Virus record (IMG/VR): IMGVR_UViG_3300046005_000547
Coordinates: 62,001-126,000 of that record
Reading direction: 5' to 3' (one strand)
DNA: 64,000 nt
The notes below the pieces were generated by a model. That model made no database searches and was not told the DNA's origin. It worked only from the letters and a program-made list of their open reading frames with translations. Below, piece by piece: positions 10,496 to 59,358 of the stretch (position 1 is the stretch's first letter; the number at the start of each line of letters is the position of its first letter). Made by a program: the position numbers and the translations under genes.

Positions 10496-10870
10496 ATCCC
10501 ATCCGCTGAAAAGTTGATGGGATTTTTATTGCGTAAAATATACATTCTAAATGATTCTTAAAACATCCATTATTTGTCCGTTAATCCATCTTAATGATAT
10601 ATGTCAATCAACTCTACAGGACTATTTGAATCCATCTTAAAACAACAAATAATTGGACAGGATTTAATGTTAACATCGAATCAATAAATTCACTGTATCG
10701 AGAACATCTTAAAGATTCATTATCGCTATTCTAGACATCGAGTTTGTAAATATCAACATAATAATACTTCTTGACTTTTCCAGCAAATTCCATTATAGTA
10801 GACTATGTCGACGTTTCAGTTAGTGTATATTACTACTTGATTATTCTTTTATATTACTACAAGATTCTTT
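10496..10870 (+). repeat. Dispersed ~470-bp family unit 1 (terminator, conserved boxes, promoter, start motif)
   Basis: catccattatttgtcc, caatcaactctacagg, aatccatcttaaa, TTGACT-N17-TATAGT, agactatgtcgacgtttcagtta and tatattactacaaga are shared with the 41.9-44.1 kb array. Confidence 0.9.
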
Positions 10871-10941
10871 TCGATTTATCTTTCTTTTTATAATTTTTAA
10901 CATATAATTTTAATCTTTAAACAAACAATGAGGGATTTACA

Positions 10942-11583
10942 ATGACATTATCGGCAGGAACACTTAGAGCAAGACTTGAATACAAACCAGAAGCTGGAGT
11001 ATTTGTTGGTAGATTAGATAGAGCCCGTAAGGGTACATTTGACAAGAAAGGATATATGGTAATCAATATTGATGGTAAGAAATATCTAGGTCATCGATTG
11101 GCATATCTTTACATGAATGGTAAATTTCCTGAACATGAAGTGAGTTTCAAAGATAAGAATACATCAAATTGTAAATGGGATAATCTAATTGAAGTTAATC
11201 CAACACAAAGAGCTTTATTATCTAAATCTGATACAAGTTCAAAATCTGGAGTAAAGGGATTGAATTTAGATAAACGAGGGTTCTACGTGGCAAGAGTGAC
11301 TCTTGATAAGAAACCCATTCAGAAATCATTCAAGTTGGACCAAAAAGATGAAGCTGTTAAATGGTTGGAATCAATCAGAGAATCTATTGGCGTCAATAAA
11401 GTGAAATCTAAAACCAACACTGGCGGGTATTATTATGACGTCAATCATAAATGGTTGAAAGATAAAGACAAACCAGTTATATTAAAGTTGACTCCAGTGG
11501 TTAAACAAGAACAACCGAAAGTTATAACAAAATTTGAATACGGACTTTCATTGTTATCTAATCTAGTGGAACAGTATTCGTAA
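10942..11583 (+). CDS. HNH_3-AP2 homing-endonuclease-derived protein with degenerate catalytic residues
   Basis: GYMVINIDGKKYLGHRLAYLYMNGKFP is the typical HNH_3 lead-in, but the usual IDH..DN reads VSF..NC; SKSGVKG...YVARV...EAVKW is AP2-like. Confidence 0.75.
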   Translation: MTLSAGTLRARLEYKPEAGVFVGRLDRARKGTFDKKGYMVINIDGKKYLGHRLAYLYMNGKFPEHEVSFKDKNTSNCKWDNLIEVNPTQRALLSKSDTSSKSGVKGLNLDKRGFYVARVTLDKKPIQKSFKLDQKDEAVKWLESIRESIGVNKVKSKTNTGGYYYDVNHKWLKDKDKPVILKLTPVVKQEQPKVITKFEYGLSLLSNLVEQYS

Positions 11584-11591
11584 TCTAAAGA

Positions 11592-11995
11592 ATCCCAGAC
11601 GTCTTAATTGACTCTGGGATTTTTATTGGATAAAATTTACATAATTGGTTTGTTGAACTGATACAGGAACATCCATTATTTGTCCAATAATCCATCCTAG
11701 TGGAATCTTTGTATAATACGTCAATCAACTCTACAGGATACATTGAATCCATCTTAAATCAACAATATGGGCGTTTTAAATTGAACATAATCGTCGAAAC
11801 TGTAAATTCAACATATCGAAAGAGACATCGAGTATTCTTAAGATGAAATAATGTATCGAGTCTGTAAATTACAATCATCGAGAAACTCCTTTCGAAATCG
11901 ATAAAAAGACAGTATACTAGACTATGTCGACGGTTTGAGTTAGTTCTATAGATTCAATTAAGTTTTCTTTTATATTACTTCAAGACTCTTTACAT
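11592..11995 (+). repeat. Dispersed ~470-bp family unit 2
   Basis: Terminator at 11592-11624, the same boxes, TTTCGA-N17-TATACT, agactatgtcgacggtttgagtta; abuts the gp17 stop. Confidence 0.9.
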
Positions 11996-12001
11996 AATAT
12001 A

Positions 12002-13981
12002 TTAGAAATGATATACTTCCACTTTATCTTCATCCAAACCGTCATTAATATATCCTACAGGTAACATTTGTTGGTCGATATAATCCATCTGTTGATTATA
12101 CAATTCCTTTCTAATGTCGACATCTCCCATATCCTTGATAAACGACGTTGAACATAACCAAGCAAATATAACACAACACATCACTAGATCGTCATGATTA
12201 GGTGGATCCGCAGAGTAACTACCTTGTCTTTCGATAAACACAGAAAACTCCTGTATAATATCAGGATCGAATATCAACAACTTAGATTCCTCAATCAACG
12301 ACTTCAATGTCATACATCCAATTCGTTTAATCTTCTTATCCATATTCAATCCCACTTCCATTGTTCCTGAAAATGATTCACATGGTATCTGTCCCTTTGG
12401 TGTCTTCTTAATGGAAATCAAATTCTCGTATTCCAAATCATCCTGAAGTATCTGTGCCACCTCCTTCGAACAATTTATCTCCACCAAAATGAATGCCTCG
12501 TTATACTCCATACCTATTTTATACAGGATATTTGGATATAACATAGGGCTAATCTTATTATCTCTATACTTACCTACAATCTTATACGGGAAATTCGTCA
12601 CATCGAAAATAACGGCTGATGAATAATCCCCACCAACACCCTTCGATGTATCCGCCGATATAATATACTGATGCCCTTCAATAGGTGCTTCCTGTATATC
12701 TAATCCATCTCTTGAATAAATGTATGGAATCGGTGACATCGATGAAATAGATGATGAATTTATAAGTGTGGCAGATGAACCTAAGAATTCACATAACACC
12801 TCTTGATTGAATTTAATCTCACCTAATATCTTTAACTGTTCATCTGCCCAAGTTGGATCTCGTTCTGGATGTTCGCTCCAATGTACAGTGAATGGTACAA
12901 ATCCGTTAGTTCCTTGTTGAGCATCATTCCAATATTTCCAAAAATGATTGTATCCTAACGGAGTTGACGTCAATACAACTTTTGTTTCTTTACCAGAGGA
13001 AATAGTAGGATACACAGAAGCGAAGAATGCGTCGGCGACGGCATTAGGAATAATTGCCGCTTCGTCCACGTATAAGAAATTACAATTATGTGAAATTACT
13101 CCATTAGAATAATAACAATGGACATCTTCAACAGTGTCTATATCGTAAACAGTTTCTGGTGTAATCTCAACAATAGATGAAATGATTTTATCCGATAGAA
13201 TATCATTTACATTTAAATCTTCGCATCTAATCCATTCTCCATTTATTTTAAATCTATGATCCAGTGTTGAATTGATATGAATGTCATCTGTAAATTTTAA
13301 TTGTAATAATCGTTCCGGCGTTCCTTGATTCAAAACTCCTTTAAAAGATTTGAAACCATAAGGAGTTTTGATTTTGAACGATTCTTTATATGAATTGTAT
13401 AATTCCTCTATAGAAATATCAAAAACATAATCCCCGTCCAAAATGGTAACAATGGTTTCTCCTGTTACACAAGACTTACCCCTGATTCCAGATGCAGAAG
13501 TTGCGGCAGTGAATATCTTAGAACCATTTTCTAAATGCATATCACCTTTGTTCAAGGATAGTACACCGTGTTGTAACCATTTCGGTAAAGATTCATACAT
13601 TAATTGTATACGACTTAGTACCTCTCTAGCAGCCGCGGCTTTATTTGCTAAAATGGCGGTAGTCTTATGGTTATTGAATAATGTGTAATGTAATATGTAT
13701 GCTGAAGTTACCGTAGTTTTTCCGAGCTGGCGCCCAATTAATGCTAAAACCTTGCGTTCACTGTGGAGTAAGCGAACATAATCCTTTTGAAACGGATACA
13801 TTTCAAAATTCACTAATCCCCTATCCAATGAAACAACTTTACAGTATGTAACAATAAAATAACAAGGATCTTGTTTGCATTTAATGTATTCTTCTATTTG
13901 TTCTTGAGTGAAATCAACTTTATATCCAGTTGGTTTTAAATTTTCATTACCATTATAACCAAGTAATTTATTATCTGCCAT
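12002..13981 (-). CDS. Terminase large subunit (gp17) with mini-intein
   Basis: YNGNENLK, EYIKCKQDP, Walker A GRQLGKTT, RGKS|CNFLYVDE Walker B, STPLG, FNQEVLCEFLGS, HDDLVM nuclease motif. Confidence 0.95.
   Translation of the reverse strand: MADNKLLGYNGNENLKPTGYKVDFTQEQIEEYIKCKQDPCYFIVTYCKVVSLDRGLVNFEMYPFQKDYVRLLHSERKVLALIGRQLGKTTVTSAYILHYTLFNNHKTTAILANKAAAAREVLSRIQLMYESLPKWLQHGVLSLNKGDMHLENGSKIFTAATSASGIRGKSCVTGETIVTILDGDYVFDISIEELYNSYKESFKIKTPYGFKSFKGVLNQGTPERLLQLKFTDDIHINSTLDHRFKINGEWIRCEDLNVNDILSDKIISSIVEITPETVYDIDTVEDVHCYYSNGVISHNCNFLYVDEAAIIPNAVADAFFASVYPTISSGKETKVVLTSTPLGYNHFWKYWNDAQQGTNGFVPFTVHWSEHPERDPTWADEQLKILGEIKFNQEVLCEFLGSSATLINSSSISSMSPIPYIYSRDGLDIQEAPIEGHQYIISADTSKGVGGDYSSAVIFDVTNFPYKIVGKYRDNKISPMLYPNILYKIGMEYNEAFILVEINCSKEVAQILQDDLEYENLISIKKTPKGQIPCESFSGTMEVGLNMDKKIKRIGCMTLKSLIEESKLLIFDPDIIQEFSVFIERQGSYSADPPNHDDLVMCCVIFAWLCSTSFIKDMGDVDIRKELYNQQMDYIDQQMLPVGYINDGLDEDKVEVYHF
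13085..13471 (-). mobile_element. Mini-intein (129 aa) in terminase, just before Walker B
   Basis: Begins CVTGET, block B STLDH, block F VYDI, ends ISHN followed by Cys. Confidence 0.9.
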
Positions 13982-15208: not shown

Positions 15209-15613
15209 TCACTTACCATCAACATAAGTTTTATATTCATCAACAAGAAAAGCGATAGCTTCTTTACCTTTAACAGATTTAAAGAAGATGGGAATATGAG
15301 AAGCAATAACAGGATCCGATAACCATTTCATTTGGTCAGGCGTTAGAACAGAAGCAGCAAAGTCATTTATTTGTTTTTCAAGTTCAGACATTGGTGGAGC
15401 AACGGGAGTTTGTTCTTGTGGTTTGACTTGAGTATTTAATAATTTTTGGATTTCATCTTGGACAGTTTTCTGGATGATTTCTTGATAATTTACAGGAGGT
15501 TGTTGAGGTGGATAATTGCCGTAGGGTGGTTGTAATGGCATTGATTGATGTTGTTTTAGAATATCCAATTGTTGTTGTAAAGAATCCAAATTTAACGTAG
15601 GCGGATTGTACAT
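15209..15613 (-). CDS. Pro/Gln-rich hypothetical protein
   Basis: 134-aa ORF; agga RBS. Confidence 0.65.
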   Translation of the reverse strand: MYNPPTLNLDSLQQQLDILKQHQSMPLQPPYGNYPPQQPPVNYQEIIQKTVQDEIQKLLNTQVKPQEQTPVAPPMSELEKQINDFAASVLTPDQMKWLSDPVIASHIPIFFKSVKGKEAIAFLVDEYKTYVDGK

Positions 15614-31200: not shown

Positions 31201-34200
31201 ATCATTCCATCTTTTTTGACTGTTAATGTGATTACTCTATCTGTTTCGCAATTTGTTGATGTAAATGTCAAATCAATTGTATTGTTTGTATCTACATCAA
31301 CTTTAATTGGAGACTCAACAGAGTATTCCGTATTAACAGGATTCAATAATTTAATCGATTCTGTTACAACACTACCATAAGAGAATTCTGGGTAATCAAT
31401 TGCTGGTTTAGATGTATCAGAACCAACTGTAATTGTTAAATTAATCACTCTTTCAGATTGAAAGATTAAATCTTCATGTGGTTTAAGATTTATAACAGCG
31501 TCACCTAATGCATCTACAGAAAATGTAAATGAATTCAAATTTGAAATTGGAGTAATTACACTACCAACTGTTACATTTGAAATACCAAATCCAGAAGATG
31601 TTCCACCAGTTACATTAATAGAACCTGTATACGTAACCTTTGGATTCCCATTTTGGACATTAAATTTGAACGAAACCAATTCACCTTCTTTAACAATATA
31701 TGTCGAAGGTAAAACGTTATAAACGGCAGATGGTCTAGTTTTTTTAATTTTGGTCAATGGATTAACGGATACAACTTCATCGGTGATAACTGGAATCGGA
31801 GATTCATCTGTATATCGTAACGATTGAGCAATGTTATATGTTGTTTCAGCAGTTGATGATGAATACTGAATACCAGCTGGTGTGTCTGTAAATGTTACAT
31901 TAAATTTAGATCCCAAGAACATTGCTGGAATATAAATGTATCCTTCATAAGATCCTTTAGAATCAGTGAATTGTTCGGCACTCGATTTTTGACCAGCAAC
32001 TTGCCACCCTTTTTCTTGTATTTCACCTTCAAAGAAATAATAGATTTTTACATTTGGTAACATTCCAGTTAATTTAACTTTTACTACATTTTCTCTTGTA
32101 GTCCCTTGAATCAATTTAACTACATTATATGTTTGACCTTGAACCACTTGATTTTTCTGAGAATTTAATTCCAAGAAATCTTGAGTGTCGGTTATTCCAG
32201 TTGTAATATCAGCAGTTTCACCACCAGGTTTCCAAGAGCCAAAAATAGTAACTTTGGTTCTTTCTGTATTTTCATTACCAATCAATAATTGTCTTGCTGT
32301 ATTTGTGTCTATTGCTTCTTCTTGGAATACAGTGTAATCTGAATCAGGAGTAAGAACAGCGTTACCTTTTGAATTATAAACACTATATGGATTCGCCGAT
32401 ACAGCAGTAGAAGCCATCATTTGTGAATATAAAACTCGTTCCGTGTATGGTAATGTTATTGTATTCTCATGCACACTTGTTGTAATTGGATTATTCGAAG
32501 GACTCAATCCACCCGTATCCAATAAGAACCCAGGACGTAATTCATTATTTTCAAAATCAATTGAGAATTTGAAATTTGAATTATCATTAGAAGGAGCTCC
32601 AATTAGAACTTCTGGATTTGTTACGTCCGCAATGTTATATCCTTTGAACGAATCAACTAAAAAACCATTGTTGAATAACGGAACACCATTATCATCTGTA
32701 AATGTTTTTGTTGATGTTTCCTTTTCAAGTAAAGATAATGAAGTGTAGTATTCAACATTTTCTAAACGTTTATCCAATGTACCAATATCTCTCATGGTAT
32801 ATCGTTTATTTTTGTACAACAATGTTTTTACGTTTGAACTATTGTCTGTGAATGGTTCAAACGTGAATGAACAAATATCCATGACATCTTTACCACTCGA
32901 AGGAGTGATTGGAGAATCATAAGAAGGTTGTCCTTTCAATAACGTAAATGTACCATTTTTATCTAATACCAATTTATCAATACGTTGTAGATAATAATCC
33001 ACATTCACTGTTATGACTTGATTAGATAACGGTAATGTAAATGTATCGAATTCCAAAGAATCTTTACGTTGGACTGGTCTAAAATCAATACAATTTCTCA
33101 ATTTGTATTCAATACCATATCCATCTGTATATTTTGGTAATGATGGATATGGAACAGCAACGTCGTATGAATTTACATAAATTGGACCATCACCAGAATG
33201 TTCAAAATAATCAACAACAATTAAGATATTTTCAGAAACATTAGCATCTTTAATTTTTTTAATGGTTGCATGTAGATAAGAAGAATTAGTTTGACCTTTA
33301 TCAATAGAATATTTGTATGAAACATCCGTCAATTCTACACCTAAAGTAGTGCCTGTGATGTAATATGCTTTGTTATCTTTAATTACAATAGAATTACTTG
33401 GATAATTGTATCCATCAATATAAGTCAATGAATCTCTTGTAATAGGATCCCCTGAATACAAATAGACGCCGACAACTCTGTTAACATCAGACACACCAAT
33501 AGAATTGTTTAATGCGGACGAACTATATTCAAATGCAATACCATAATCTTTTCTTAGAATTTTCGTTCTTGATGCGTTACCAGAATTATAGATTGTTGTC
33601 GTTACACTAACGGTTCCATTGAAAGAAGAATCATTGAAATTCAATTCTGCTGTTGAACTAGAACCAATAGGATTATTAACAGTCAACGTTGAATTTGATG
33701 CATCAATAATACTACCAACAGGGAAGTTGGTTTCATTAGATGATGTCAATACGTTGATGATGTAATGTTCATTGATAGAAGAACCAGTTGATGCATCGAA
33801 ATCTTTATACGCAGAACCAGAAGAAAGAGTACAAACACCATTATATACATTCGCTGAATTGTATGTAATCTTAGAGGTGTATCTTAAATTGTTAATTGAT
33901 TTAACAGTGATATTTGGAACCTGGAAAACCAATAATTGTTTATTTGTATCTTTAATGGTTTCACTAACTGGTTTCAAATGTGATGTTACATTAGAAGCAT
34001 TGGTCCATGTAATATCAGAAACATCTTTGAATTTGTATCCTTTGGTATCAACATCATCCAAGAACAATTTGAATACACCTAATGTTGAATAATCAACACC
34101 AATACAGATTGCAGTTCCAATGATTCTTGAAGCTGAATCAAAGAATGTTAATTCCGTTCTTTTATTTGCCGTTGGTAAGAATCCAGGCGTAATTAAACTC

Positions 34201-35489
34201 ACTTCGATGTAATTGCCATATTGTGATGATATGATATGGTCATTTTCTGTTGAGAATTCTCTTGATTTATCTAATTCAATGAATGATGTTCTATTCTTAT
34301 CAACTTCATATCCTTTGATATATGCTTTACCGGCAGAGATTGATAATTGTAATTTATTCTCATCCGCATCATCATAGATTGTTGGTAGTAATCCTTCTAC
34401 AATATAATTACCTGATTCATCGTATGTTCTTCTGGCGAATTCTTCTGCGATGTTCGAATAGATAGGTTTTCTATTGTCAACAGTTACAACACCATTGCTG
34501 ATGTGAGATAAATCAATGAAATCTTGACTTGATAATAATTTGTCTTGATATGATTTTGTTTCCAACTTCAACGAAATCATATATCTATCTGCGCCTGGAG
34601 CAGCGAAATTGTTTGAACCAAAAGAAGGATCCAATAAAGAAGGATCTTCATCTGATGTAACAATAGATTCAACTGGAGTCAATCCAATTACAGCAGACAC
34701 ACCAATTTTATAGAAATTATTGGTTGCTGTATCTAATTGGATAATCTTTTCTAATGTCAATGATACATTAGATTCAATAGAAGCAACTGTACCAACGTAT
34801 TTTGATGTGAAAATATCATCACCAACTTTTACGTCAGTTAAGAATGTTGTTTCGATACCTGTTACAACTGTTCCACCTTTTGTGAATGAGATAGAACCAT
34901 TTAAAAATGTATCGTATTTCTTTACAACAGTAGTTTGAGGTGGACAATAGACGAATGTATTTTTTGTATAGAATACACCTTCATTGATATGGAACAATAC
35001 CGATTTACCTGGAACTTCCGCTGTTTCCGCTGTATACAATAACACATCAGTTTTTGTGTAAATTCTAATGGTAGAATTTGGATCCAAATCAACATCGCTG
35101 AATTTTGTATCACCACCAGAAACTAAGATGGCAAAAATTGTGACGTAATCGGCACCAGAAACTGGAGTTGCGTGTTTAATCAAAAAACTTCTGTTATCAG
35201 AAGTTTTGAATGTCATATCAACTAATGATGTTATATCAACTGGTAATGAAGTATTTGTTTTGATTTTGAAATATGTAACAAAATCATAGAAATGTTCACC
35301 ACCAGATACAACAGAACCGTCTTGGAAGATATGATTGGCAAACTTTGCTGTTTGATTTTTAAGAATTGATTGGATCTGAGAGAATTCTCTTGCTTGGCAA
35401 GCTACGCCAGGTTTGAATAGAATTTTATGGAAATTCTTTGTTTCATCAAAATCATCGAAGTATGGAGATACATTGTGATTCATTGTCAT
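25221..35489 (-). CDS. Giant baseplate/tail-associated structural protein (DUF4815/VrlC-like) with a long beta-rich insertion
   Basis: NVSPYFDDFD..KILFKPG..QARE, APGADR, FARRTYDESGNY, KRYTMRDIG.L.KR.ENVEYYTSLSLLE, DPVAQTF, FMSQNARTW..DQ..DL.F, C-terminal PRVRNLRAIA. Confidence 0.8.
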   Translation of the reverse strand: MTMNHNVSPYFDDFDETKNFHKILFKPGVACQAREFSQIQSILKNQTAKFANHIFQDGSVVSGGEHFYDFVTYFKIKTNTSLPVDITSLVDMTFKTSDNRSFLIKHATPVSGADYVTIFAILVSGGDTKFSDVDLDPNSTIRIYTKTDVLLYTAETAEVPGKSVLFHINEGVFYTKNTFVYCPPQTTVVKKYDTFLNGSISFTKGGTVVTGIETTFLTDVKVGDDIFTSKYVGTVASIESNVSLTLEKIIQLDTATNNFYKIGVSAVIGLTPVESIVTSDEDPSLLDPSFGSNNFAAPGADRYMISLKLETKSYQDKLLSSQDFIDLSHISNGVVTVDNRKPIYSNIAEEFARRTYDESGNYIVEGLLPTIYDDADENKLQLSISAGKAYIKGYEVDKNRTSFIELDKSREFSTENDHIISSQYGNYIEVSLITPGFLPTANKRTELTFFDSASRIIGTAICIGVDYSTLGVFKLFLDDVDTKGYKFKDVSDITWTNASNVTSHLKPVSETIKDTNKQLLVFQVPNITVKSINNLRYTSKITYNSANVYNGVCTLSSGSAYKDFDASTGSSINEHYIINVLTSSNETNFPVGSIIDASNSTLTVNNPIGSSSTAELNFNDSSFNGTVSVTTTIYNSGNASRTKILRKDYGIAFEYSSSALNNSIGVSDVNRVVGVYLYSGDPITRDSLTYIDGYNYPSNSIVIKDNKAYYITGTTLGVELTDVSYKYSIDKGQTNSSYLHATIKKIKDANVSENILIVVDYFEHSGDGPIYVNSYDVAVPYPSLPKYTDGYGIEYKLRNCIDFRPVQRKDSLEFDTFTLPLSNQVITVNVDYYLQRIDKLVLDKNGTFTLLKGQPSYDSPITPSSGKDVMDICSFTFEPFTDNSSNVKTLLYKNKRYTMRDIGTLDKRLENVEYYTSLSLLEKETSTKTFTDDNGVPLFNNGFLVDSFKGYNIADVTNPEVLIGAPSNDNSNFKFSIDFENNELRPGFLLDTGGLSPSNNPITTSVHENTITLPYTERVLYSQMMASTAVSANPYSVYNSKGNAVLTPDSDYTVFQEEAIDTNTARQLLIGNENTERTKVTIFGSWKPGGETADITTGITDTQDFLELNSQKNQVVQGQTYNVVKLIQGTTRENVVKVKLTGMLPNVKIYYFFEGEIQEKGWQVAGQKSSAEQFTDSKGSYEGYIYIPAMFLGSKFNVTFTDTPAGIQYSSSTAETTYNIAQSLRYTDESPIPVITDEVVSVNPLTKIKKTRPSAVYNVLPSTYIVKEGELVSFKFNVQNGNPKVTYTGSINVTGGTSSGFGISNVTVGSVITPISNLNSFTFSVDALGDAVINLKPHEDLIFQSERVINLTITVGSDTSKPAIDYPEFSYGSVVTESIKLLNPVNTEYSVESPIKVDVDTNNTIDLTFTSTNCETDRVITLTVKKDGMIVTGANVDSFHTNTSTPTQSIKYPISVGDFLDKNGSFEFIFGDDLGVSISKKTLVVGKYVKKNFNVATSGDIFGHIIPNQSASFILNTNYYDFPVYAAEQVPYLLEVSESGNSFSPIASYSSKFSVSSGAGYFTKTSKNVSVTTIGTLDKPYTIRLTLSDDNKGGGAQTLLYVDKTQENFTLSVKRAGSEVAEGSTIVSGDILTCTLTSSYGSAYASKTNSEKQVKVSVSNLVSSLYSLSNSTVYLDGSGVATFTVTIKNYIGNLDDSLFNIVTDCNGNTKNSVHLTLLKAAKKSVGTQFTNTGGVDLPSLSSTTTQTFKVKFTSTNVNPADIVNWYLKVVGGSGTIVEGLDGTSEIATSGSSVFADGQILSGSATLTSLATPKTFTLKSTAPNNLRIVAGVKHPLTNGEDTLNVNATTPSFGISKSGCDDKILDDGETVTYIIAALDNYVSRNISWVLSSVNNSVALNKLSSSNLTGSATLSVGGNTSVTFARNVISGLSTDHQLALTVTDNTTGTTKLATKTDQEITLKKLDISFVVKFYDATTKEEFQTVVNVTDSDKPKKIEIKIRASSATATSSLKYRISSDLVDLSTDVNGVRITSPITVEDSFDSSKFVTRTVYVQNNTSTPVSSSSLVAPIKVECISYKSTYNDTPSYVSGVGVLKLQNEQSFDDTPSYVPGVGVLKLQNAPSFVDTITLSNDVTNNASVQMKYNVVENYKVSSNISGTTTTYVLISPNDPYSLLTVVPSNFVVSSNYNTLTNVTPTNSNIVSKFGTSNVLYYSVPNFNNGFSVNLNTDSKNANDTFYIRIIQIKSDNTNIAFSNEIQSVVFKNGVKSYTLSNSINPVPKYSTGLVSINPNNFDRYVDNHSLKIINSNSLNLSTDVKIDVFYVNTSEVASTTNITSIDVSGNLTPAINFRGVASVNIKNISGKTGDFKISVSNGSTTGGISINTKGDSGFYINAEDTIQDKISSGSITTLGTMVDDYFLLKIWDNATSAAIGTGITYYDAFQNTLTVLPSGYVKLQNYKDVNGERRFDFYYKITAGYIVSTSKDIKFYTKDAGSTETKTVRKCSLGVSETGSYEISSDCDTLSTAVGTKQNDGSLKSIASVTVKSSNISNDGSILNLTFNVSSANITPCNVDGSLISNQPTIVSYTLPKGNSSKTFYFKNATPADKIILNEVMTLSVSGRASDASILSTKSTTTANFINVSVPYRSISFESNGSPITEVVEGEKFNVKVTDTYKTETSSKLIFNPNLISCSTASNNELITLRKDFIDSYIVPVVAVNDNVSNTTSSSAIFSVGDVSNSIIIKEAPASAATINITSLQTTDVYETSGEISFRVDTTYLDTGTIIPFGWTIGDNVVNLTSVLVNGTDYKNNTSPALTVGTVSGANKTYSTTIKLKFNANYSISKSADITVFVNGSSVKSNTSNSITIPVNVSPSSSGNKLTGSENVLNKDKPANFAPIIVFSDISAAEKKTLALGYKYEYHIPYTIGVLDIDARSAVGAKKYTGSVSLSVDVPSAGNVVSRGTATLDVTSFNGDFRQGVITLSKGFHGDFDIKLTATLDDGKTTTGSFKSDIGKPFSLDPVAQTFYVSPDDYPNGLFLSKTDIFFYSKPSDTNIPVWIELRKTVNGYPKSDSKLEFSRVELQNSSVNVPSSLVGVITPVPTTFTFSDPIYIPPGEYSIIIGSSSKEYKVFVGELGQIDVSNGKIISENNPDGSVGSFFMSQNARTWNADQLKDLMFRLYKCEFDTNTNQEIVLEMKPNNTNFETDIVHLNSPENVIPGTSSKYSVSLTGNFIDYHEVDNNKDVLLSSRTKPASAYKLKTVLSSTDNNVSPIIQKQKINTKFIHNLINPKMNLIKQETDPSDGDALSKYVTKKVTLSEGFDATGVRVILDVNRQYGTEIEVYVKLIQNEDYSNFKGKDYILLPLTGTKSYSRNNDDFIIDEYKLDNISYVYGDKTFESFKSFAVKVVMYSDNPAKVPRVRNLRAIATS
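29120..29251 (-). repeat. 63-bp in-frame tandem duplication (DTPSYVxGVGVLKLQN x2)
   Basis: cattctgtaatttaagaacaccgacaccgg at 29138 and 29201. Confidence 0.85.
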
Positions 35490-40874: not shown

Positions 40875-41828
40875 TTACCTCATTCTTTCTAATGATAGAT
40901 CTAATGTAATTGGAACAGTCGATTCTGTAATATAATACGTTATAGTTATGTTATAATTGTGTTCGATGGAATCGACTGATATATCCATGACATTTGCTCT
41001 AGGTTCATAATTCCTTATTACGTCGGAGATTGTTCTTTTAATCAATAGATTAGTGATTAAAGATGGATTATCAAATAATAAATTCATACATTGAGAACCA
41101 AGTTTTGAATTAAACGGTCTTTCAAAATTGATTGTTTGGATTAAATGTTTGATAGATGTCGATACAGCATTATTATTAGTCTTGAACATAATATCTGCCG
41201 GAGTAGCAAATCTGTATTCCATGTTATTTGAATGAATCGTTCTACCAACTAGATACATGATTACATTTTGTACAATTTGGGTAATATCATCACTTCTAGT
41301 TTTCAATCTAACGTAATCCATATTGTTATAGATTACCATTTCGCCTTCTAACGGTTCAAAATATACACTAGAAGGATCGATGCCAATTATGTTATACGGG
41401 ATGATGGTTCCATCTGGTATATTTTCTGTAATCAAAGTGAAGATGATTTCCGCGCCTTCTTGTATAATATCGGCATTTATGGATAAAGTGTATTTCTCAT
41501 CTAAATTGTTCAATTTGGTAGAAGAAGTCGATTCTGGTTTAGAGGATATTTCTTTGTCAATTTTATCATACATGGTAACGGATGTTGAGAATAATGCGGT
41601 TGCATATAATTCTAATTCAGTGTCCGATATAATTGTTTTAATTTTACCAATAAACGAATTACTAACATAAAGATTATCGTCTATCGTAAGATATCGAGTA
41701 AATTCAGTACCAGAACCTATTACAATTGTAGAATGAGTATTATATGAAATAACACCAACGCCCTTATATCTTTCCAAAGAAGATGGATTTGGCATTAAAG
41801 TTAAATCTAAATCTTTATATCTTGTCAT
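40875..41828 (-). CDS. Baseplate wedge subunit (gp25) with a large internal insertion
   Basis: N-terminal YKDLDL..P and C-terminal AVSTSIKHLI...ERPF...IRNYEPRA...LERMR, separated by ~190 extra residues. Confidence 0.75.
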   Translation of the reverse strand: MTRYKDLDLTLMPNPSSLERYKGVGVISYNTHSTIVIGSGTEFTRYLTIDDNLYVSNSFIGKIKTIISDTELELYATALFSTSVTMYDKIDKEISSKPESTSSTKLNNLDEKYTLSINADIIQEGAEIIFTLITENIPDGTIIPYNIIGIDPSSVYFEPLEGEMVIYNNMDYVRLKTRSDDITQIVQNVIMYLVGRTIHSNNMEYRFATPADIMFKTNNNAVSTSIKHLIQTINFERPFNSKLGSQCMNLLFDNPSLITNLLIKRTISDVIRNYEPRANVMDISVDSIEHNYNITITYYITESTVPITLDLSLERMR

Positions 41829-42131
41829 ATGTTTATTCTGTATGTATTGTTTATATTATTTAATGGCATAGTGAAACGTCAATAATAATCCATCTATTAT
41901 CATCGTTAAATGTTTTTTAATGTTATGTTCAATCAACTCTACAGGATATTCTGAATCCATCTTATATTGGCGAATATCCATGTAGGATTAAATGTTAACA
42001 TCGAATCAACTATAATCATGTATCGAGGATGTCTTAATATAATCCTTTCGATGTATATTGTATCGAGTTTGATTATTGCAAGTTAAAGATTTCTCTTGAC
42101 TTTTCGAGGAAATATCGTTATAGTAGACTAT

Positions 42132-42302
42132 GTCGACGTTTCAGTTATTGCCTTTAAGGTCATTTTTATATTCTTTAATGTCTTCTATATTACTTCAAGA
42201 CTCTTTATCGACAATAATATACTCTATTCTAAACAATAATTCATCATTAAAATCTCTGCGTCTCAGATCCCGATAGAATGTAAAAGTTCTGTTGGGATTT
42301 TT
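42132..42302 (+). ncRNA. Predicted ~170-nt small RNA, unit 3
   Basis: TTGACT-N17-TATAGT promoter, conserved 5' end, terminator at 42267-42302; transcription is inferred. Confidence 0.45.
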
Positions 42303-42604
42303 ATTGGATAAAAATTTACATTATATTCAATTCCATCTTAACATCAAACCATCCATTATTTGTCCAATAATCCACCTTAATGGAATCTTTCCAATATACA
42401 TCAATCAACTCTACAGGATATAACCATTCCATCTTAAAATCCAAATATGGATTTCTATATTAAACAAGAACATCGAAGTTGTAAATTCAACATATCGAAA
42501 GAGTCTTAAAGATGGTGTTCGATAACATTAGACATCGAACTTGTAATAATCATGTATCGAGAAACTCCTTTCGAAATGATAAAAAAGACAGTATACTAGA
42601 CTAT

Positions 42605-42778
42605 GTCGATGTTTCAGTTATTGCCTTTACTTCAATTTTAATATTCTTCTATATCATTATTAGATTCTTTATAGACATTACTACAAGAACATAATATTGT
42701 CTTTATCGAGTAATTATTCATCATAAAATCTCTGCTCCTCAGATCCTGACATGAACTAAACATTATGTCAGGATTTTT
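42605..42778 (+). ncRNA. Predicted ~175-nt small RNA, unit 4
   Basis: TTTCGA-N17-TATACT promoter, terminator at 42743-42778; transcription is inferred. Confidence 0.45.
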
Positions 42779-43077
42779 ATTGGATAAAATTTACATAATC
42801 GGTTTGTTGAACTGATACTGGAACAACCATTATTTGTCCAATAATCCATCCTAGTGGAATCTTCTTGTAATATGTCAATCAACTCTACGAGATATATTGA
42901 TTCCATCTTAAAACAACAATATGGATGTCTATATTAAACAAGAACATCGAAGTTGTAAATTCAACATATCGAAAGACTATTGATAACATCGAAACGGAAT
43001 CTTAGACATCGAGTATGTAAACAACAACGATTAGAAACTCCTTTCGAAATGTCAGAAACTCGGATATACTAGACTAT

Positions 43078-43244
43078 GTCGACGTTTCAGTTAGTGTATC
43101 TATTGTTTTTCTAATATTCTTTATTGTCTTCTATATTACTACAAGACATTATCCTATTCTTTATCGAGTATATTCTATACAATAATCCAACATTAAAATC
43201 TCTGACATTCAGATCCCACCAGATTTATTCTGAGTGGGATTTTT
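43078..43244 (+). ncRNA. Predicted ~165-nt small RNA, unit 5
   Basis: TTTCGA-N17-TATACT promoter, terminator at 43213-43244; transcription is inferred. Confidence 0.45.
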
Positions 43245-43545
43245 ATTGTTTAAAATTTACAATATAACAATCCTATGTTGAATCATTAACATCCATTATT
43301 TGTCCGTTAATCCATCCTAGTGGAATCTTTGTATAATATGTCAATCAACTCTCTGCATGATATTCTGAATCCATCTTAAAACAACAAATATCCACGTTAA
43401 ATCAAACGTAATCATCGAAACAATAAACATCATGTATCGAAAGAGTCTTAAGAACATCGAAACAGAATATCGTTCATCGAGTCTGTATATTACAGGTTAA
43501 GAATACTCCTTTCGAAATGGTAGAAAATGTAGTATAGTAGACTAT

Positions 43546-43706
43546 GTCGACGTTTCAGTTATTACCTTTACTTTCATTAAGTGTTCTTCTATATTACTAC
43601 AAGACTCTTTATAGAGTATAATAATGTCTTTATCGAGCAATTATTCAACATTAAAATCTCTGTCATTCATATCCCGATGAGAACCAATCATTTCATCGGG
43701 ATTTTT
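43546..43706 (+). ncRNA. Predicted ~160-nt small RNA, unit 6
   Basis: TTTCGA-N17-TATAGT promoter, terminator at 43671-43706; transcription is inferred. Confidence 0.45.
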
Positions 43707-44099
43707 ATTGGATTCAATTTACAATATATCAGTTCTGTATTAGTTTGATAACATCCATTATTTTGCTCGTTAATGGACTCTAATGGAACGTTTCCAATAT
43801 ACATCAATCAACTCTACAGGATATAACCAATCCATCTTAAATCAACAATATAGACTGTTAAATTAAACATTAACATCGGAATCAATTATAATCATGTATC
43901 GAAAGAGTCTTAAGAACATCGAAGGATAATCTTTAACATCGAATGTGTAAATTACAATCATCTAGAAACTCCTTTCGAAATCGATAAAAAGACAGTATAC
44001 TAGACTATGTCGACGGTTTGAGTTAGTTCTATTAATATGTTTTAGTATTTTTCTATATTACTTCAAGACTCTTTATAGACTTTATTCTTTTATTATTCC

Positions 44100-44127
44100 T
44101 TTCGATTAACATTTTATTCACTATAAT
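44100..44127 (+). promoter_or_regulatory. Phage promoter TTTCGA-N16-TATAAT for ligase
   Basis: tttcga at 44100, tataat at 44122 followed by aga. Confidence 0.7.
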
Positions 44128-44164
44128 AGAACTCGTTACTTAACTTTATACAGGAAACTTTAAT

Positions 44165-45541
44165 ATGTCAGTCACTAGAATCATCAATGAATTACGTTCA
44201 ACCAATTCAAGAAATGACAAAATCGCCATCTTAACAGAAAACAAAGATAATGAAACGTTAAAACGAGTATTGGTTCTTGCGTTAGATCCAACAATTCAAT
44301 TCTATCAACGTAAGATTCCATCATTCACATTTTCTGGTAATCTTATTGAATTCAACAACGCATTAGATCTTCTGTCAACATTATCCAGTAGAGAATTAAC
44401 GGGAAATGCTGCTGTTGAATTCTTATCAACATTATTATCTGATGTTTCAAACGATGAAGCTGAAATCATCAAATTGATTATCCAGAAAGACTTGAAATGT
44501 GGAGTCAATGAATCAACTGTTAATAAAGTTTGGGGTAACTTAATTCCTGATTACCCTTATCAAAGATGTTCGTCTATCTCTAGTGTCAAATTAGATAAAT
44601 GGAATTTACAGGATGGAATCTTCTCTCAATTGAAAGCAGATGCTCTATACTGTAACCTTAATCATGATGAATTTGGCGATGTTAAGATGTTATCTCGAAA
44701 TGGTAAAGAATTCCCATTAGACAAATTCCAGGACATTGTATACCAAACCAAATTACATTTACAGACCAACACTCAGACACAAGGTGAGTTGATGGTTAAA
44801 CGAGATGGGATTATCTTACCGCGCGAACAATCTAATGGATCTATCAATAGTGTTTCAAAAGGTGGAGATTTTGGTGTTGGTGAAGAACCTTATTTTGTTG
44901 TATGGGATCAAGTTCCATTAGATGAAGTTGGATCTAAATGTTCAATCAAAATTCCATACAAAGATAGATTCGTTACATTAACAAGTCAAGTATCTAATGT
45001 AAATGGTTGTATCGAATTGATTGAAACAAGAATTGTACATTCTATCGATGAGATGATTGAACATTTTGAACATAATCTGAAATTGGGATTAGAAGGTTCT
45101 GTTGTCAAAAATCCAAATGGATTCTGGGAAGATAAGACAAGCAAAGACCAAGTGAAATTGAAATTGGAAGTTGATTCAATTGAACTTGAAGTCATTGGAT
45201 TCAAAGAAGGTAAAGGTAAGAACGCAAATACATTTGGTTCAATTATCTGTCAATCATCTTGCGGTCAATTGAAAGTTGCTATCTCGGGAATGCCTGACAA
45301 CAAACGAATGGAAATCCATAAGAAACGTGATGAAATGATTGGTTCCATTATTTCTGTCAAAGCAAATGCAATCACAGAACCAAATAAAGGTAATCCATTG
45401 TATTCTTTATTCTTGCCTAGATTCGAAGAAGAACGATATGATAAGAACACTGCTGATAGTCTTGATGAAATTCAATTGAAATTTGAAAGTGCTATCTCAG
45501 ACATTAAAGATAAATTGTTGAAACAATATAAAGGTAAATGA
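44165..45541 (+). CDS. ATP-dependent DNA ligase (gp30)
   Basis: QKDLKCG, motif I QLKADA, SRNGK, GELMV, EGSVVK, KLKLE, SLFLPRF. Confidence 0.9.
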   Translation: MSVTRIINELRSTNSRNDKIAILTENKDNETLKRVLVLALDPTIQFYQRKIPSFTFSGNLIEFNNALDLLSTLSSRELTGNAAVEFLSTLLSDVSNDEAEIIKLIIQKDLKCGVNESTVNKVWGNLIPDYPYQRCSSISSVKLDKWNLQDGIFSQLKADALYCNLNHDEFGDVKMLSRNGKEFPLDKFQDIVYQTKLHLQTNTQTQGELMVKRDGIILPREQSNGSINSVSKGGDFGVGEEPYFVVWDQVPLDEVGSKCSIKIPYKDRFVTLTSQVSNVNGCIELIETRIVHSIDEMIEHFEHNLKLGLEGSVVKNPNGFWEDKTSKDQVKLKLEVDSIELEVIGFKEGKGKNANTFGSIICQSSCGQLKVAISGMPDNKRMEIHKKRDEMIGSIISVKANAITEPNKGNPLYSLFLPRFEEERYDKNTADSLDEIQLKFESAISDIKDKLLKQYKGK

Positions 45542-45542
45542 T

Positions 45543-46031
45543 ATGCCAAACGTTATAACAGATCTGGAAATTAAACAGTTTGTTAAATCAATAATGAGCT
45601 GTAGTATTAACGATATCGAATCTGTATCCAAGAAATGGTGTGACGATGTTAATACCAAACAAATTGTAGTTGACCTTGGTAAGAAAGAACTTAATGACTT
45701 ATGGAAATATGTTATACAACATACAAATTGGGACAGATATCTAAGTTCCATTGAATTTAAAGATGTTATACAGAAATGGCAATTGACTCAACAATTCGAT
45801 TCAATCGATAAAGCAGAAGAACGACATACAATTGAACCAAAACAAATTTGGAATCATAATGAATTTAATACAGACCATGAAATTGTATCCGTAGGCGAAA
45901 TTGTATCCGTAGGCAAATCGTTTTTGAATGTACAAGAAGATATATTTGATTGCGTTACATATAAAACGTCTGAATTCGATGCAACCGTTAAATTAGATTA
46001 TTTCCTAAGGAATTTCAAGAGAAAATCTTGA
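45543..46031 (+). CDS. Hypothetical protein (18-bp duplication EIVSVG x2 at 45879-45914)
   Basis: 162-aa ORF in the ligase operon. Confidence 0.6.
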   Translation: MPNVITDLEIKQFVKSIMSCSINDIESVSKKWCDDVNTKQIVVDLGKKELNDLWKYVIQHTNWDRYLSSIEFKDVIQKWQLTQQFDSIDKAEERHTIEPKQIWNHNEFNTDHEIVSVGEIVSVGKSFLNVQEDIFDCVTYKTSEFDATVKLDYFLRNFKRKS

Positions 46032-46061: not shown

Positions 46062-46144
46062 GTGTTGTAGAATTATCGTTTAAATCATCCATCTTAAATC
46101 AACAAATAAATGGATAAAATCAATGTAATTATCGGAGAACTATC

Positions 46145-58825: not shown

Positions 58826-58860
58826 AATCCAATTTAGATTAAATTCTAAATTGGATTTTT
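58826..58860 (+). terminator. Rho-independent terminator
   Basis: aatccaatttaga...tctaaattggatt followed by a T-run. Confidence 0.75.
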
Positions 58861-59017
58861 ATTGGATAAAATTTCATACGCAATTTATAATCCTCATAAT
58901 TTGTTAATTACGGACGATTTAAGATGTTTTAATTAAATGTTAATGTAACTGTACAACATTATATTGAATCCGTCTTAAAACAACAAATTTCCATGTTTAA
59001 ATTGATTTTAAAATATC

Positions 59018-59045
59018 TTTCGAAACATCGAATACTCGTTATAAT
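59018..59045 (+). promoter_or_regulatory. Phage promoter TTTCGA-N16-TATAAT
   Basis: Exact motif followed by aga. Confidence 0.7.
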
Positions 59046-59079
59046 AGATCTCAATACAAATTTATTATGAGGAATTAAA

Positions 59080-59358
59080 ATGGCAACTTACCTAACATCC
59101 AAACGTCAATTTGACAAATTGAATGAATTTGAACGTAAAGATGTTCAACAAATTTTAGACAACTTCTTACATAAATCTCATACATTCGTTTCCATTGAAT
59201 TGAGAAAACCTCCAAAAGGTATTCAGATGTCGGTTGTTTATGGATCGTTGGGTATTTGCGAATTTAATATGAAAGAATATATAAGAATGAATAGTAAAAT
59301 CGTTAAACAATCGGTTGCCGTTGAAACCGTTAAATCTTGGTTAAATGAAAAAGGATAA
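59080..59358 (+). CDS. Hypothetical protein
   Basis: 92-aa ORF; gagga RBS. Confidence 0.6.
   Translation: MATYLTSKRQFDKLNEFERKDVQQILDNFLHKSHTFVSIELRKPPKGIQMSVVYGSLGICEFNMKEYIRMNSKIVKQSVAVETVKSWLNEKG

What the first reader, a model, noticed from the sequence alone, without database searches (positions are those of the whole stretch)
41870..44095. Tandem array of five ~470-bp promoter-RNA-terminator cassettes: candidate small-RNA array or multi-copy origin
Seen: 2.3 kb without genes in an otherwise dense genome, made of five units with a fixed order of elements. The order is CATCCATTATTTGTCC, CAATCAACTCTACAGGA, ATCCATCTTAAA, phased TCGA motifs, promoter (TTTCGA or TTGACT-N17-TATA(C/G)T), near-invariant AGACTATGTCGA(C)G(T/G)TT(C/T)..GTTA, a variable T-rich tract, TATATTACT(A/T)CAAGA, AAAATCTCTG, then a terminator. 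The first unit is degenerate at its 5' end and the last lacks the terminator. Terminator stems differ between units but stay paired, so the copies have diverged while keeping structure. This is not CRISPR-like and has no conserved ORF. Known: T4 origins are a promoter plus a downstream unwinding element primed by an R-loop, and oriE has iterons; phages also make decoy RNAs (ToxI mimics, RNA anti-CRISPRs). Inference: either a family of ~160-175-nt RNAs with constant scaffold and variable segments, or repeated transcription-primed origins.
Basis: partly seen in the sequence, partly recalled or inferred. Interest (0 to 1): 0.88.

Follow-up and report, generated by a model that had tools for sequence, protein, structure and literature searches.

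The report
Arrays of promoter–terminator cassettes, T4-like phage
The gene-free 2.3 kb is a real tandem array of five ~470-bp cassettes (regulator-box field, promoter, short non-coding transcript, terminator), one of about seven such arrays in an uncultured T4-like phage; it looks like an oversized version of the known "PeSL" promoter–terminator cassettes, and whether its short RNAs do anything is unknown.

Summary
Window 41876-44164 holds five head-to-tail units of 412-474 bp. An assembly from another sample reproduces them at 99.98% identity.

There are two more units at 10.5-12.0 kb, about 30 units in at least 7 arrays in the 235-kb source genome, and about 27 in a 249-kb relative whose ligase is 75% identical. 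Nothing similar turned up in isolated phages, the metagenome scan or Rfam.

Each unit has, in order:
- far-upstream boxes;
- 4-6 ATCGA boxes about 21 bp apart;
- a sigma70-type promoter;
- an invariant start-site box, AGACTATGTCGA;
- a G-poor, unstructured, non-coding body of about 165-177 nt;
- a strong terminator whose stem covaries.

The last unit of each array examined has no terminator and leads into genes, here the DNA ligase operon.

My best reading is that these are enlarged, regulator-controlled relatives of the PeSL cassettes of T4-type phages. They sit at the heads of early-type operons and at synteny breakpoints between the two phages. A constant RNA scaffold is not supported, and a multi-copy replication origin is unlikely. 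It remains open whether the short RNAs are the functional product. I rate this a new variant of a known kind, of moderate to high interest.

The parts
41876..42349 (+). Unit 1. Its 5' boxes are degenerate and its promoter is the TTGACT-N17-TATAGT variant.
42350..42823 (+). Unit 2, a complete cassette.
42824..43289 (+). Unit 3, a complete cassette.
43290..43752 (+). Unit 4, a complete cassette.
43753..44164 (+). Unit 5, the terminal unit. It has no terminator, and its promoter and roughly 160-nt leader run into the DNA ligase gene.
42473..42574 (+). ATCGA-box field of unit 2, with TCGA cores at 42473, 42495, 42519, 42535, 42557 and 42571. The equivalent fields lie at 42001-42107, 42947-43047, 43415-43515 and 43899-43984.
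   Evidence: fixed offsets, 20-22 bp spacing, 5-fold TCGA enrichment
42096..42124 (+). Promoter of unit 1: TTGACT, 17 bp, TATAGT.
42569..42597 (+). Promoter of unit 2: TTTCGA, 17 bp, TATACT.
43042..43070 (+). Promoter of unit 3: TTTCGA, 17 bp, TATACT.
43510..43538 (+). Promoter of unit 4: TTTCGA, 17 bp, TATAGT.
43973..44001 (+). Promoter of unit 5: TTTCGA, 17 bp, TATACT.
42598..42609 (+). Invariant start-site box AGACTATGTCGA, shown for unit 2. The other copies are at 42125, 43071, 43539, 44002, 10800 and 11919.
   Evidence: identical in all 29 aligned RNAs and in every unit of both genomes whose match spans the box
42129..42302 (+). Predicted short non-coding transcript 1, about 174 nt. The start is inferred from the -10 element.
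42602..42778 (+). Predicted short non-coding transcript 2, about 177 nt.
43075..43244 (+). Predicted short non-coding transcript 3, about 170 nt.
43543..43706 (+). Predicted short non-coding transcript 4, about 164 nt.
42268..42297 (+). Terminator hairpin of unit 1 (-18.2 kcal/mol), followed by TTTTTATTGG.
42744..42773 (+). Terminator hairpin of unit 2 (-16.6 kcal/mol).
43214..43239 (+). Terminator hairpin of unit 3 (-18.4 kcal/mol).
43671..43702 (+). Terminator hairpin of unit 4 (-16.9 kcal/mol).
44100..44127 (+). Second, simple promoter of the phage's general class (CTTTCGA, 16 bp, TATAAT, then AGA), just upstream of the ligase gene.
44165..45541 (+). DNA ligase gene, the first gene fed by the array. 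It is followed by a gp55-like late sigma factor and gp47/gp46-like SbcCD nuclease genes.
40875..41828 (-). gp25-like baseplate wedge gene, the divergent left neighbour of the array.
10565..10940 (+). Sixth unit in the window. It acts as promoter and leader of an HNH endonuclease gene (10942-11583).
11671..12003 (+). Seventh unit in the window. It has no terminator and points into the 3' end of the convergent large-terminase gene (12002-13981, minus strand).

Best explanation
The array is one of at least seven arrays, about 30 copies per 235-kb genome, of a 460-475-bp composite cassette. The cassette runs terminator, box field, sigma70-type promoter, short non-coding leader. It is an enlarged relative of the PeSL (promoter-early stem-loop) cassettes of T4-type phages.

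Shown from sequence:
- Every unit carries a -35 (TTTCGA or TTGACT), a 17-bp spacer, TATA(C/G)T and an invariant AGACTATGTCGA box over the expected start site.
- Units 1-4 then carry a body of about 110-135 nt that is G-poor, unstructured and has no ORF, followed by a strong hairpin-plus-T5 terminator.
- Unit 5 has no terminator and runs into the ligase operon.
- In the four other arrays of the source genome whose downstream end I read, the array points the same way as the small-gene operon that follows it, and its last unit leads into those genes. Two units flank a homing-endonuclease gene.
- Arrays share identical blocks of 50-95 bp and coincide with synteny breakpoints between the two phage genomes.

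Inferred:
- Host RNA polymerase fires at each promoter early in infection.
- The internal units release terminated RNAs of about 165-177 nt, and each terminator shields the next promoter from upstream transcription.
- The 4-6 ATCGA boxes, spaced about 21 bp apart on one face of the helix, together with the start-site box, bind a regulator that is not yet identified. That regulator would switch all of these promoters together.
- The shared blocks make the arrays recombination junctions that shuffle gene modules, as proposed for PeSLs.
For: - Unit anatomy and phasing.
- Promoter class enriched in the window: 14 matches against 2.1 expected. Simple versions sit in front of ordinary genes.
- Terminators: 35 hairpins with 20 distinct stems. 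The stem positions just above the conserved ATCC/GGAT base (positions 5-6) are 100% paired with 4-6 pair types.
- Genome-wide family.
- Arrays sit at the heads of operons of small, mostly unannotated ORFs.
- The cargo between two units is an HNH endonuclease.
- The strongest conservation lies in the untranscribed boxes and at the start site.
- No RNA structure in the body or in the upstream half. No conserved ORF.
- Arrays share exact blocks of 50-95 bp, and the same body and terminator modules recur in different arrays.
- Flanks are exchanged at arrays between the two genomes. The source has baseplate|array|ligase. The relative has baseplate|array|another operon, and a different left flank|array|ligase.
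- The phage is a T4-type phage: gp25, gp6, gp55, gp46/47, UvsW, topoisomerase II, large terminase and ligase.
- PeSL definition and behaviour: PMC2839356 and PMC4122927.
Against: - PeSLs are short and have the hairpin just upstream of the promoter and a Shine-Dalgarno/ATG at the 3' end. Here the hairpin is about 290 bp upstream of the -35, and the internal units carry no gene at all.
- Cargo-less units share motifs that gene-end terminators lack: ACATAAAATCT before the hairpin and TATATTAC..AAGAC. These are conserved in both genomes, so the unit looks like a designed RNA gene, not a deletion scar.
- G depletion of the body, 8% against 12-18% elsewhere, suggests selection on the transcript.
- No regulator has been identified, there are no expression data and the host is unknown.
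- The relative's gene order rests on one assembly, and repeats of up to 95 bp could in principle cause a mis-join.
Confidence: 0.55

Rival explanations
1. The short RNAs are the functional product. On this reading the phage carries a multi-copy gene family (at least 15 genes read in each genome) for abundant early non-coding RNAs that are G-poor and unstructured. They would act in bulk, for example as a sponge for a host RNA-binding factor such as Rho, Hfq, RNase E or S1. Alternatively they could act as decoys that share the first ~85 nt with the leaders of the phage's own early mRNAs.
For: - Own promoter and own strong terminator in every internal unit.
- A conserved 5' 24 nt, inner motif and 3' ACATAAAATCT motif in both genomes, the last absent from gene-end terminators.
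- Composition of U 44, A 32, C 17, G 8%.
- Copy number and persistence of the arrays in two species.
- The same leader heads the operon mRNAs.
Against: - No conserved secondary structure apart from the terminator.
- Length and sequence of the body vary through sub-repeat gain and loss.
- No complementary targets in the 64-kb window beyond chance.
- No Rfam family matches.
- The most conserved positions of the unit are untranscribed DNA.
- The U tail is only 5 long.
Confidence: 0.25
2. The array is a promoter stack gated by antitermination. The internal terminators would stop transcription only until a phage antiterminator appears. After that, all five promoters would read through into the ligase operon, stepping up expression. 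This is the logic of the lambda PR'-tR' cassette with its 6S RNA.
For: - Architecture of promoter, short terminated transcript, then operon.
- The conserved initial transcribed sequence is shared by all units, including the terminal ones.
- The same terminator type recurs between genes inside the early operons.
Against: - No put-like or boxB-like conserved RNA hairpin in the leader.
- No Q-like or N-like gene was recognised among the neighbours scanned.
- The terminal units, which need no antitermination of their own, carry the same boxes.
Confidence: 0.1
3. The arrays are repeated replication origins, either transcription-primed (T4 oriF/oriG type) or iteron-type (T4 oriE, lambda, P1).
For: - Boxes phased at about 21 bp resemble iteron spacing.
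- A promoter is followed by a body that is 76% A+T.
- The array lies between divergent modules next to replication genes.
- From my own knowledge, T4 uses several origins.
Against: - About 30 copies per genome, each oriented with and feeding an operon.
- The RNA is G-poor and U-rich and ends at a strong intrinsic terminator, so a persistent R-loop is disfavoured.
- The box cores are only about 8 bp long.
- No initiator-like gene was found next to any array.
- The GC-skew turns at the arrays simply follow gene orientation.
Confidence: 0.05
4. The arrays have no function of their own. They would be selfish or neutral amplifications of a regulatory cassette by unequal recombination, kept intact by exchange with functional copies.
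For: - Modules are shared mosaically among arrays, with identical blocks of 50-95 bp.
- Unit-by-unit orthology between the two genomes is blurred.
Against: - Units within a genome are only about 70% identical, and about 64% between genomes, so they are old and not recently amplified.
- The boxes, promoters and terminators are intact in nearly all ~58 copies.
- Both genomes devote about 13 kb to them.
Confidence: 0.05

Closest known systems
PeSL (promoter-early stem-loop) cassettes of T4-type phages RB49/phi1, T4/PST and KVP40/nt-1 (PMC2839356, PMC4122927)
   Same: A repeated composite of a stem-loop terminator with a conserved stem base and a sigma70-like early promoter. It occurs in many copies between small, mostly unannotated ORFs of a T4-type genome, flanks mobile or variable genes, and is associated with rearrangements between related phages.
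   Different: The units here are about five times larger. They carry about 290 bp of conserved boxes between hairpin and promoter, an invariant start-site box, and in most copies no gene. In place of a gene there is a conserved non-coding body of about 110-135 nt. They also form tandem arrays of 3-5 units. The parts of the two PeSL papers I read describe none of these features.
Lambda PR'-tR' cassette with its 6S RNA (own knowledge)
   Same: A strong promoter followed by a short terminated non-coding transcript, placed directly upstream of an operon.
   Different: The lambda cassette is single-copy and depends on Q and a sigma-dependent pause. No Q-like gene or pause element was identified here.
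Long repeat regions of Campylobacter group II T4-related phages CP21, CP220 and CPt10 (PMC4546147)
   Same: Kilobase-sized, mostly gene-free repeat regions that separate genome modules in T4-related phages and mark module rearrangements between relatives.
   Different: Those units are 72-86 bp with a 13-bp core, often lie in inverted arms, and were not described as promoter-terminator cassettes. There is no sequence similarity.
Multi-copy bacterial small-RNA genes such as Qrr1-5, LhrC1-5 and OmrA/B (own knowledge)
   Same: Several paralogous short RNA genes, each with its own promoter and intrinsic terminator. They have a conserved 5' part and more variable remainder.
   Different: Those RNAs have defined structures and known targets. 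Here no structure, no targets and no expression data are available, and the copy number is far higher.
Iteron-type origins and T4 oriE/oriF/oriG (own knowledge)
   Same: Short boxes phased at about two helical turns, next to a promoter and an AT-rich stretch.
   Different: The units occur about 30 times per genome, no initiator gene is adjacent, and the transcripts are terminated and G-poor.

Membership tests
PeSL cassettes (T4-type phages) | A conserved repeated element that combines a stem-loop terminator with a sigma70-like early promoter | tested here: met
   Every complete unit has a hairpin plus T5 and a -35/17 bp/-10 promoter.
PeSL cassettes (T4-type phages) | Compact: the stem-loop lies just upstream of the promoter, and a Shine-Dalgarno sequence and start codon of a gene lie at the 3' end (figure legends in PMC4122927) | tested here: not met
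   The hairpin is about 290 bp upstream of the -35. Units 1-4 have no Shine-Dalgarno sequence, start codon or gene. Short PeSL-like versions do exist elsewhere in the window, at 5759-5860 and 58827-59080.
PeSL cassettes (T4-type phages) | Many copies in hyperplastic regions of a T4-type genome, next to variable or mobile ORFs | tested here: met
   There are about 30 copies. Downstream genes are mostly small and unannotated, and an HNH endonuclease lies between two units.
PeSL cassettes (T4-type phages) | Association with insertions, deletions or exchanges between closely related genomes | tested here: met
   Flanking gene blocks are exchanged at arrays between the 235-kb and the 249-kb genome, and an ORF is inserted in one unit. 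Caveat: the relative's gene order comes from one assembly.
PeSL cassettes (T4-type phages) | Formation of mini-circles by recombination between neighbouring cassettes | not testable with these tools
   This needs inverse PCR or split-read analysis of raw reads.
Trans-acting small RNA gene family | Independent transcription unit with its own promoter and intrinsic terminator | tested here: met
   Predicted from sequence only. There are no expression data.
Trans-acting small RNA gene family | Conserved secondary structure or covariation outside the terminator | tested here: not met
   MFE z-scores of the bodies range from -0.6 to +0.6. RNAalifold on 29 copies returns only 3 invariant pairs.
Trans-acting small RNA gene family | A conserved seed with complementary targets | tested here: inconclusive
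   The 5' 24 nt are conserved, but no complementary site beyond chance was found in the window. The host genome is unknown.
T4-type transcription-primed origin (oriF/oriG) | A promoter plus a downstream unwinding element that holds a persistent RNA-DNA hybrid | tested here: inconclusive
   The body is 76% A+T. However, the RNA is 8% G and ends at a hairpin of -16.6 to -18.4 kcal/mol plus a U tract, which argues against a stable hybrid.
Iteron-type origin | Phased iterons next to the gene of the initiator that binds them | tested here: not met
   Phased ATCGA boxes are present. No Rep- or initiator-like gene lies next to any array scanned, and there are about 30 copies per genome.
Known RNA families (ToxI, CRISPR-type, riboswitches and others in Rfam 15) | A match to a curated covariance model | tested here: not met
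   No match at gathering score over the whole window. No match at E<=1 over 41800-44200.
Lambda-type antitermination cassette | An antiterminator gene or a cis-acting antiterminator RNA structure | tested here: inconclusive
   The leader has no conserved hairpin. No recognisable N or Q gene appeared among the neighbours scanned, but most early ORFs have no annotation.

The most novel reading that the evidence does not exclude
The cargo-less units may be true genes for a new class of highly multi-copy early phage RNAs, with at least 15 genes read in each genome. These RNAs would be G-poor, unstructured transcripts of 140-200 nt, made from promoters governed by a dedicated system of phased boxes. 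They would act in bulk on a host RNA-handling factor, as a sponge for Rho, Hfq, RNase E or S1. Alternatively they would act as decoys for whatever recognises the shared 5' leader of the phage's early mRNAs.
Probability: 0.2. Interest if true: 0.8.

Novelty: new variant of a known kind. Interest (0 to 1): 0.6.

Why it matters
About 5% of a 235-kb T4-type genome is spent on some 30 copies of one elaborate regulatory cassette, and most copies transcribe nothing but a short non-coding RNA. If the cassettes are regulator-controlled early promoters, they define a new and easily testable transcription-control system in a deep branch of T4-like phages. That system has a -35 element of CTTTCGA, phased ATCGA boxes and an invariant start-site box.

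If the arrays really are the breakpoints of module exchange, the PeSL idea extends from single-gene shuffling to large-scale genome rearrangement. If the RNAs themselves are functional, they would be an unusually high-copy family of phage non-coding RNAs.

Tried and rejected
- Tandem Repeats Finder did not report the array because the copies are too diverged. The repeat finder, MAFFT and nhmmer did.
- Rfam gave no match at gathering score or at E<=1. No tRNA or tmRNA genes were found.
- Isolated phage genomes showed no DNA similarity in near or distant mode.
- The metagenome scan with the -10 plus start-box pattern returned 66 single hits. None matched the unit profile, so they are chance hits.
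- The only further ligase relatives found (25-38% identity) are on short contigs. The two whose upstream DNA I checked show no such arrays.
- Coding was rejected.
  - The ORF starting at the ATG of the start box ends at different places: 4, 12, 12, 25 and 48 codons by my own reading of the sequences.
  - A minus-strand frame across the far-upstream boxes is open in some units but stopped or frameshifted in units 4 and 5, again by my own reading.
  - The best stop-free frame is shared by only 21 of 30 units, and it lies over the promoter.
- An RNA scaffold was rejected for the bodies and for the upstream half.
- The antisense-target search of the four RNA bodies against the rest of the window gave only chance-level matches, 367 on the minus strand against 331 on the plus strand.
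- I looked for a second conserved promoter after the terminator (TTTACA) and for minus-strand promoters in the box field. The -10 positions are not conserved across units (and my own reading).
- Unit-by-unit orthology between the two genomes was not recoverable. All best matches are 0.6-0.72 identical.
- I tried to confirm the relative's gene order in independent assemblies. Only Logan contigs that break at the array edges were found.
Full report
**What is there.** Window 41876-44164 contains five head-to-tail direct repeats of 474, 474, 466, 463 and 412 bp, with mean column identity of 73%. Tandem Repeats Finder misses them because they are too diverged. A profile built from the five units scores each at 315-422 bits. 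No ORF longer than 60 codons lies in the stretch, and no reading frame is open in all units.

- far-upstream boxes ATCCATTATTTG, CAATCAACTCTA and TCCATCTTAAA;
- four to six ATCGA boxes;
- a -35 (TTTCGA, or TTGACT in unit 1), a 17-bp spacer and TATA(C/G)T;
- the invariant box AGACTATGTCGA;
- a T-rich body;
- a hairpin followed by TTTTTATTG.

Unit 1 is degenerate at its 5' end. Unit 5 has no terminator and continues, past a second simple promoter at 44100-44127, into the ATG of a DNA ligase gene at 44165.

**It is real, and it is a genome-wide family.** A 4,986-bp contig assembled from a different sample spans ligase, five units and gp25 with one mismatch. K-mer based Logan contigs break exactly at the array edges, as expected for a repeat.

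The start box occurs twice more in the window. A unit at 10565-10940 drives an HNH endonuclease gene. A unit at 11671-12003 abuts the 3' end of the convergent large-terminase gene.

Pattern scans of IMG/VR show that the window is positions 62001-126000 of a 234,735-bp contig. That contig carries about 30 units, in arrays of 3-5 plus some single and partial copies. A 249-kb relative, whose ligase is 75% and baseplate proteins 81-87% identical, carries about 27 units in comparable arrays, one of them in front of its ligase gene.

Nothing similar exists in isolated phage genomes, in the metagenome scan or in Rfam. The only more distant ligase relatives found (25-38% identity) are on short contigs, and the two checked show no such arrays.

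**The phage.** Neighbouring genes identify a deep-branching T4-type myovirus of about 31% G+C. They include:
- baseplate genes: gp25, gp6 and other baseplate wedge proteins;
- a 3,422-residue virion protein and the large terminase;
- replication and recombination genes: UvsW, topoisomerase II subunits, DNA ligase and gp47/gp46;
- a gp55-like late sigma factor.

The closest isolates, pelagimyophages and cyanomyophages, are only about 35-40% identical in gp6.

**What is conserved.** A conservation profile over all 58 unit hits from both genomes shows that the best-kept positions are DNA elements outside the transcript or at its very start:
- the three far-upstream boxes;
- the ATCGA boxes;
- ACTCCTTTCGAAAT at -35;
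- the -10 element;
- the 12-bp start box, which is identical in every copy whose match spans it.

TCGA is five times enriched in the array. Relative to the start-site box (which begins at the last base of the -10 element), TCGA sits at -123, -101, -81, -61, (-40) and -26. That is about two helical turns apart, so the boxes lie on one face of the helix.

The -35 element CTTTCGA, with a 16-17 bp spacer and TATAAT followed by AGA, also heads ordinary genes at 1579, 3004, 44100, 52409, 53306 and 59018. Those sites lack the box field. The units are therefore an elaborated subclass of the phage's general promoter.

**The transcripts.** The predicted RNAs of units 1-4 are 164-177 nt long. Across both genomes, 29 distinct copies measure 137-201 nt from the start box to the terminator.
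- Apart from the terminator they fold no better than dinucleotide shuffles, with z between -0.6 and +0.6.
- RNAalifold finds no common structure.
- The upstream halves of the units are likewise unstructured.
- The body is U 44, A 32, C 17, G 8%, the reverse of the skew of coding strands.
- The body is built from short degenerate sub-repeats that come and go.
- Its "variable" tracts and its terminator stems fall into a limited set of modules that recur in different arrays.

Conserved islands do exist in the body in both genomes. They are the first 24 nt, TATATTAC..AAGAC, and ACATAAAATCT before the hairpin. The last of these is absent from gene-end terminators.

The terminators themselves are sound. 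There are 35 hairpins of -12 to -19 kcal/mol with 20 different stems. The stem positions just above the conserved ATCC/GGAT base are 100% paired while using four to six pair types. However, it reflects a pool of terminator variants shared across the genome and not independent drift within this array.

**Context and evolution.** In the four other arrays of the source genome whose downstream end I read, the array points the same way as the genes that follow it, and its last unit leads into them. Those genes are mostly small and unannotated, as in the hyperplastic early regions of T4-type phages.

Units within one genome are about 70% identical, and about 64% identical between genomes. The family is therefore old and only weakly homogenised. 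Unit-by-unit orthology cannot be traced. Even so, different arrays share exact blocks of 50-95 bp.

Comparing gene neighbours shows that arrays coincide with synteny breakpoints:
- In the source genome the baseplate block is joined through the array to the ligase operon.
- In the relative the baseplate block is joined through an array to a different operon. That operon lies behind another array in the source genome.
- The relative's ligase operon lies behind an array whose left flank matches yet another locus of the source genome.
- The unit-HNH-unit locus is similarly joined to different right-hand partners in the two genomes.

The source arrangement is independently confirmed. The relative's arrangement rests on one assembly.

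**Interpretation.** The closest known thing is the PeSL cassette of T4-type phages. A PeSL is a conserved stem-loop terminator plus a sigma70-like early promoter, repeated between small, variable early genes and implicated in modular shuffling (PMC2839356, PMC4122927).

The units share the following with PeSLs:
- the composite nature;
- the conserved stem base;
- the genomic setting;
- the association with a mobile gene;
- the association with rearrangements.

They differ from PeSLs in these ways:
- size;
- the 290-bp box field between hairpin and promoter;
- the invariant start-site box;
- the absence of a gene in most copies, with a conserved non-coding body in its place;
- the formation of tandem arrays.

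I therefore treat them as a new variant that works like PeSLs, not as plain members of that family.

The mechanism I commit to, with confidence of about 0.55, has four parts:
- Each unit is a regulator-controlled early promoter.
- The terminator insulates the next unit.
- The terminal unit feeds the operon.
- The phased ATCGA boxes and the start box bind a factor that switches all units together.

Recombination at the shared blocks is a consequence that has reshaped the genomes.

The main rival (0.25) is that the short RNAs are themselves the product and act in bulk. This is compatible with the same anatomy, and only expression and binding data can separate the two. An antitermination-gated promoter stack (0.1), replication origins (0.05) and functionless amplification (0.05) fit less well, for the reasons given under the rival explanations.

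**Verdict.** The cassette reading is right, the RNA-scaffold reading is not supported, and the origin reading is unlikely. This is a lineage-specific, conserved and so far undescribed elaboration of a known kind of phage regulatory element. Its function is testable with ordinary transcription assays and with the raw reads of the source samples.

Noticed in passing
window 11671-12003 (+) against 12002-13981 (-): A terminator-less unit fires straight into the 3' end of the convergent large-terminase gene. The relative has the same layout (L134 units 7739-8495 abut its terminase homologue). This would produce early antisense RNA to a late gene, reminiscent of T4 'anti-late' RNA.
   Followed up: partly
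window 10942-11583 (+): An HNH homing-type endonuclease gene sits between two units. A 55% identical homologue lies between units in the relative (L130 8085-8756).
   Followed up: partly
window 1579, 3004, 44100, 52409, 53306 and 59018 (+): This is the phage's general promoter class: AATAATTCTTTCGA, 16 bp, TATAAT, then AGAAT. The -35 is CTTTCGA and not TTGACA. That points either to an unusual host sigma specificity or to a phage factor acting at -35.
   Followed up: partly
window 3617-3645, 5759-5786, 10496-10523, 11592-11620, 58827-56 and 60401-28: Gene-end terminators all have the form ATCC..GGAT plus TTTTATTG(G/T), often followed by ATAAAATTT. Two of them (5759 and 10496) are identical hairpins behind different genes.
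   Followed up: partly
window 46080-46110 (+): A lone copy of the far-upstream box ATCCATCTTAAATCAACAA lies about 40 nt before the start of the gp55-like late sigma gene (46145).
   Followed up: no
window, whole: The T4 late-promoter motif TATAAATA occurs only 5 times against 12.5 expected by chance. Late promoters of this phage may therefore have a different consensus.
   Followed up: no
window 23369-24260, inside ORF 22910-24361 (-): There are 2.9 tandem copies of a 303-bp repeat at 94% identity inside a 483-residue structural-region gene. This amounts to repeated ~101-residue domains, and Pfam gives no hit. The region has the highest G+C of the window (39%).
   Followed up: partly
window 25221-35489 (-): A 3,422-residue ORF (with a DUF4815 hit on record) lies next to the baseplate genes. 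The relative has a 3,389-residue homologue.
   Followed up: no
window 12002-13981 (-): The large-terminase homologue shows a weak, below-threshold intein-splicing-domain hit between its N- and C-terminal domains.
   Followed up: no
start boxes, e.g. window 44007-44021; L063 8401-8415: The putative 5'-terminal AUG opens a 4-codon mini-ORF (AUG UCG ANN NUU UGA) in all units of the relative and in the terminal units of the source genome. The stop is lost in the internal units of the source genome.
   Followed up: partly
units, about -101 and -4..+8 (e.g. window 42495-42506 and 42598-42609): The box TCGAAAGAGTCT upstream and the start box AGACTATGTCGA are inverted copies of a composite motif, TCGA-N4-GTCT. 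They lie about 100 bp apart. Related AAGACTCTTTAT(C/A)GA copies occur in the transcribed body (I15/I16). They could be an operator pair.
   Followed up: no
L134 with L132, joined coordinates 11365-11885: The relative carries 1.2 extra units inside its structural block, between the homologues of window genes 13984-15132 and 15209-15613. The source genome has only a 77-bp gap at that position.
   Followed up: no
window 45879-45918: There are 2.3 copies of an 18-bp tandem repeat inside the ORF of unknown function at 45543-46031, just downstream of the ligase gene.
   Followed up: no
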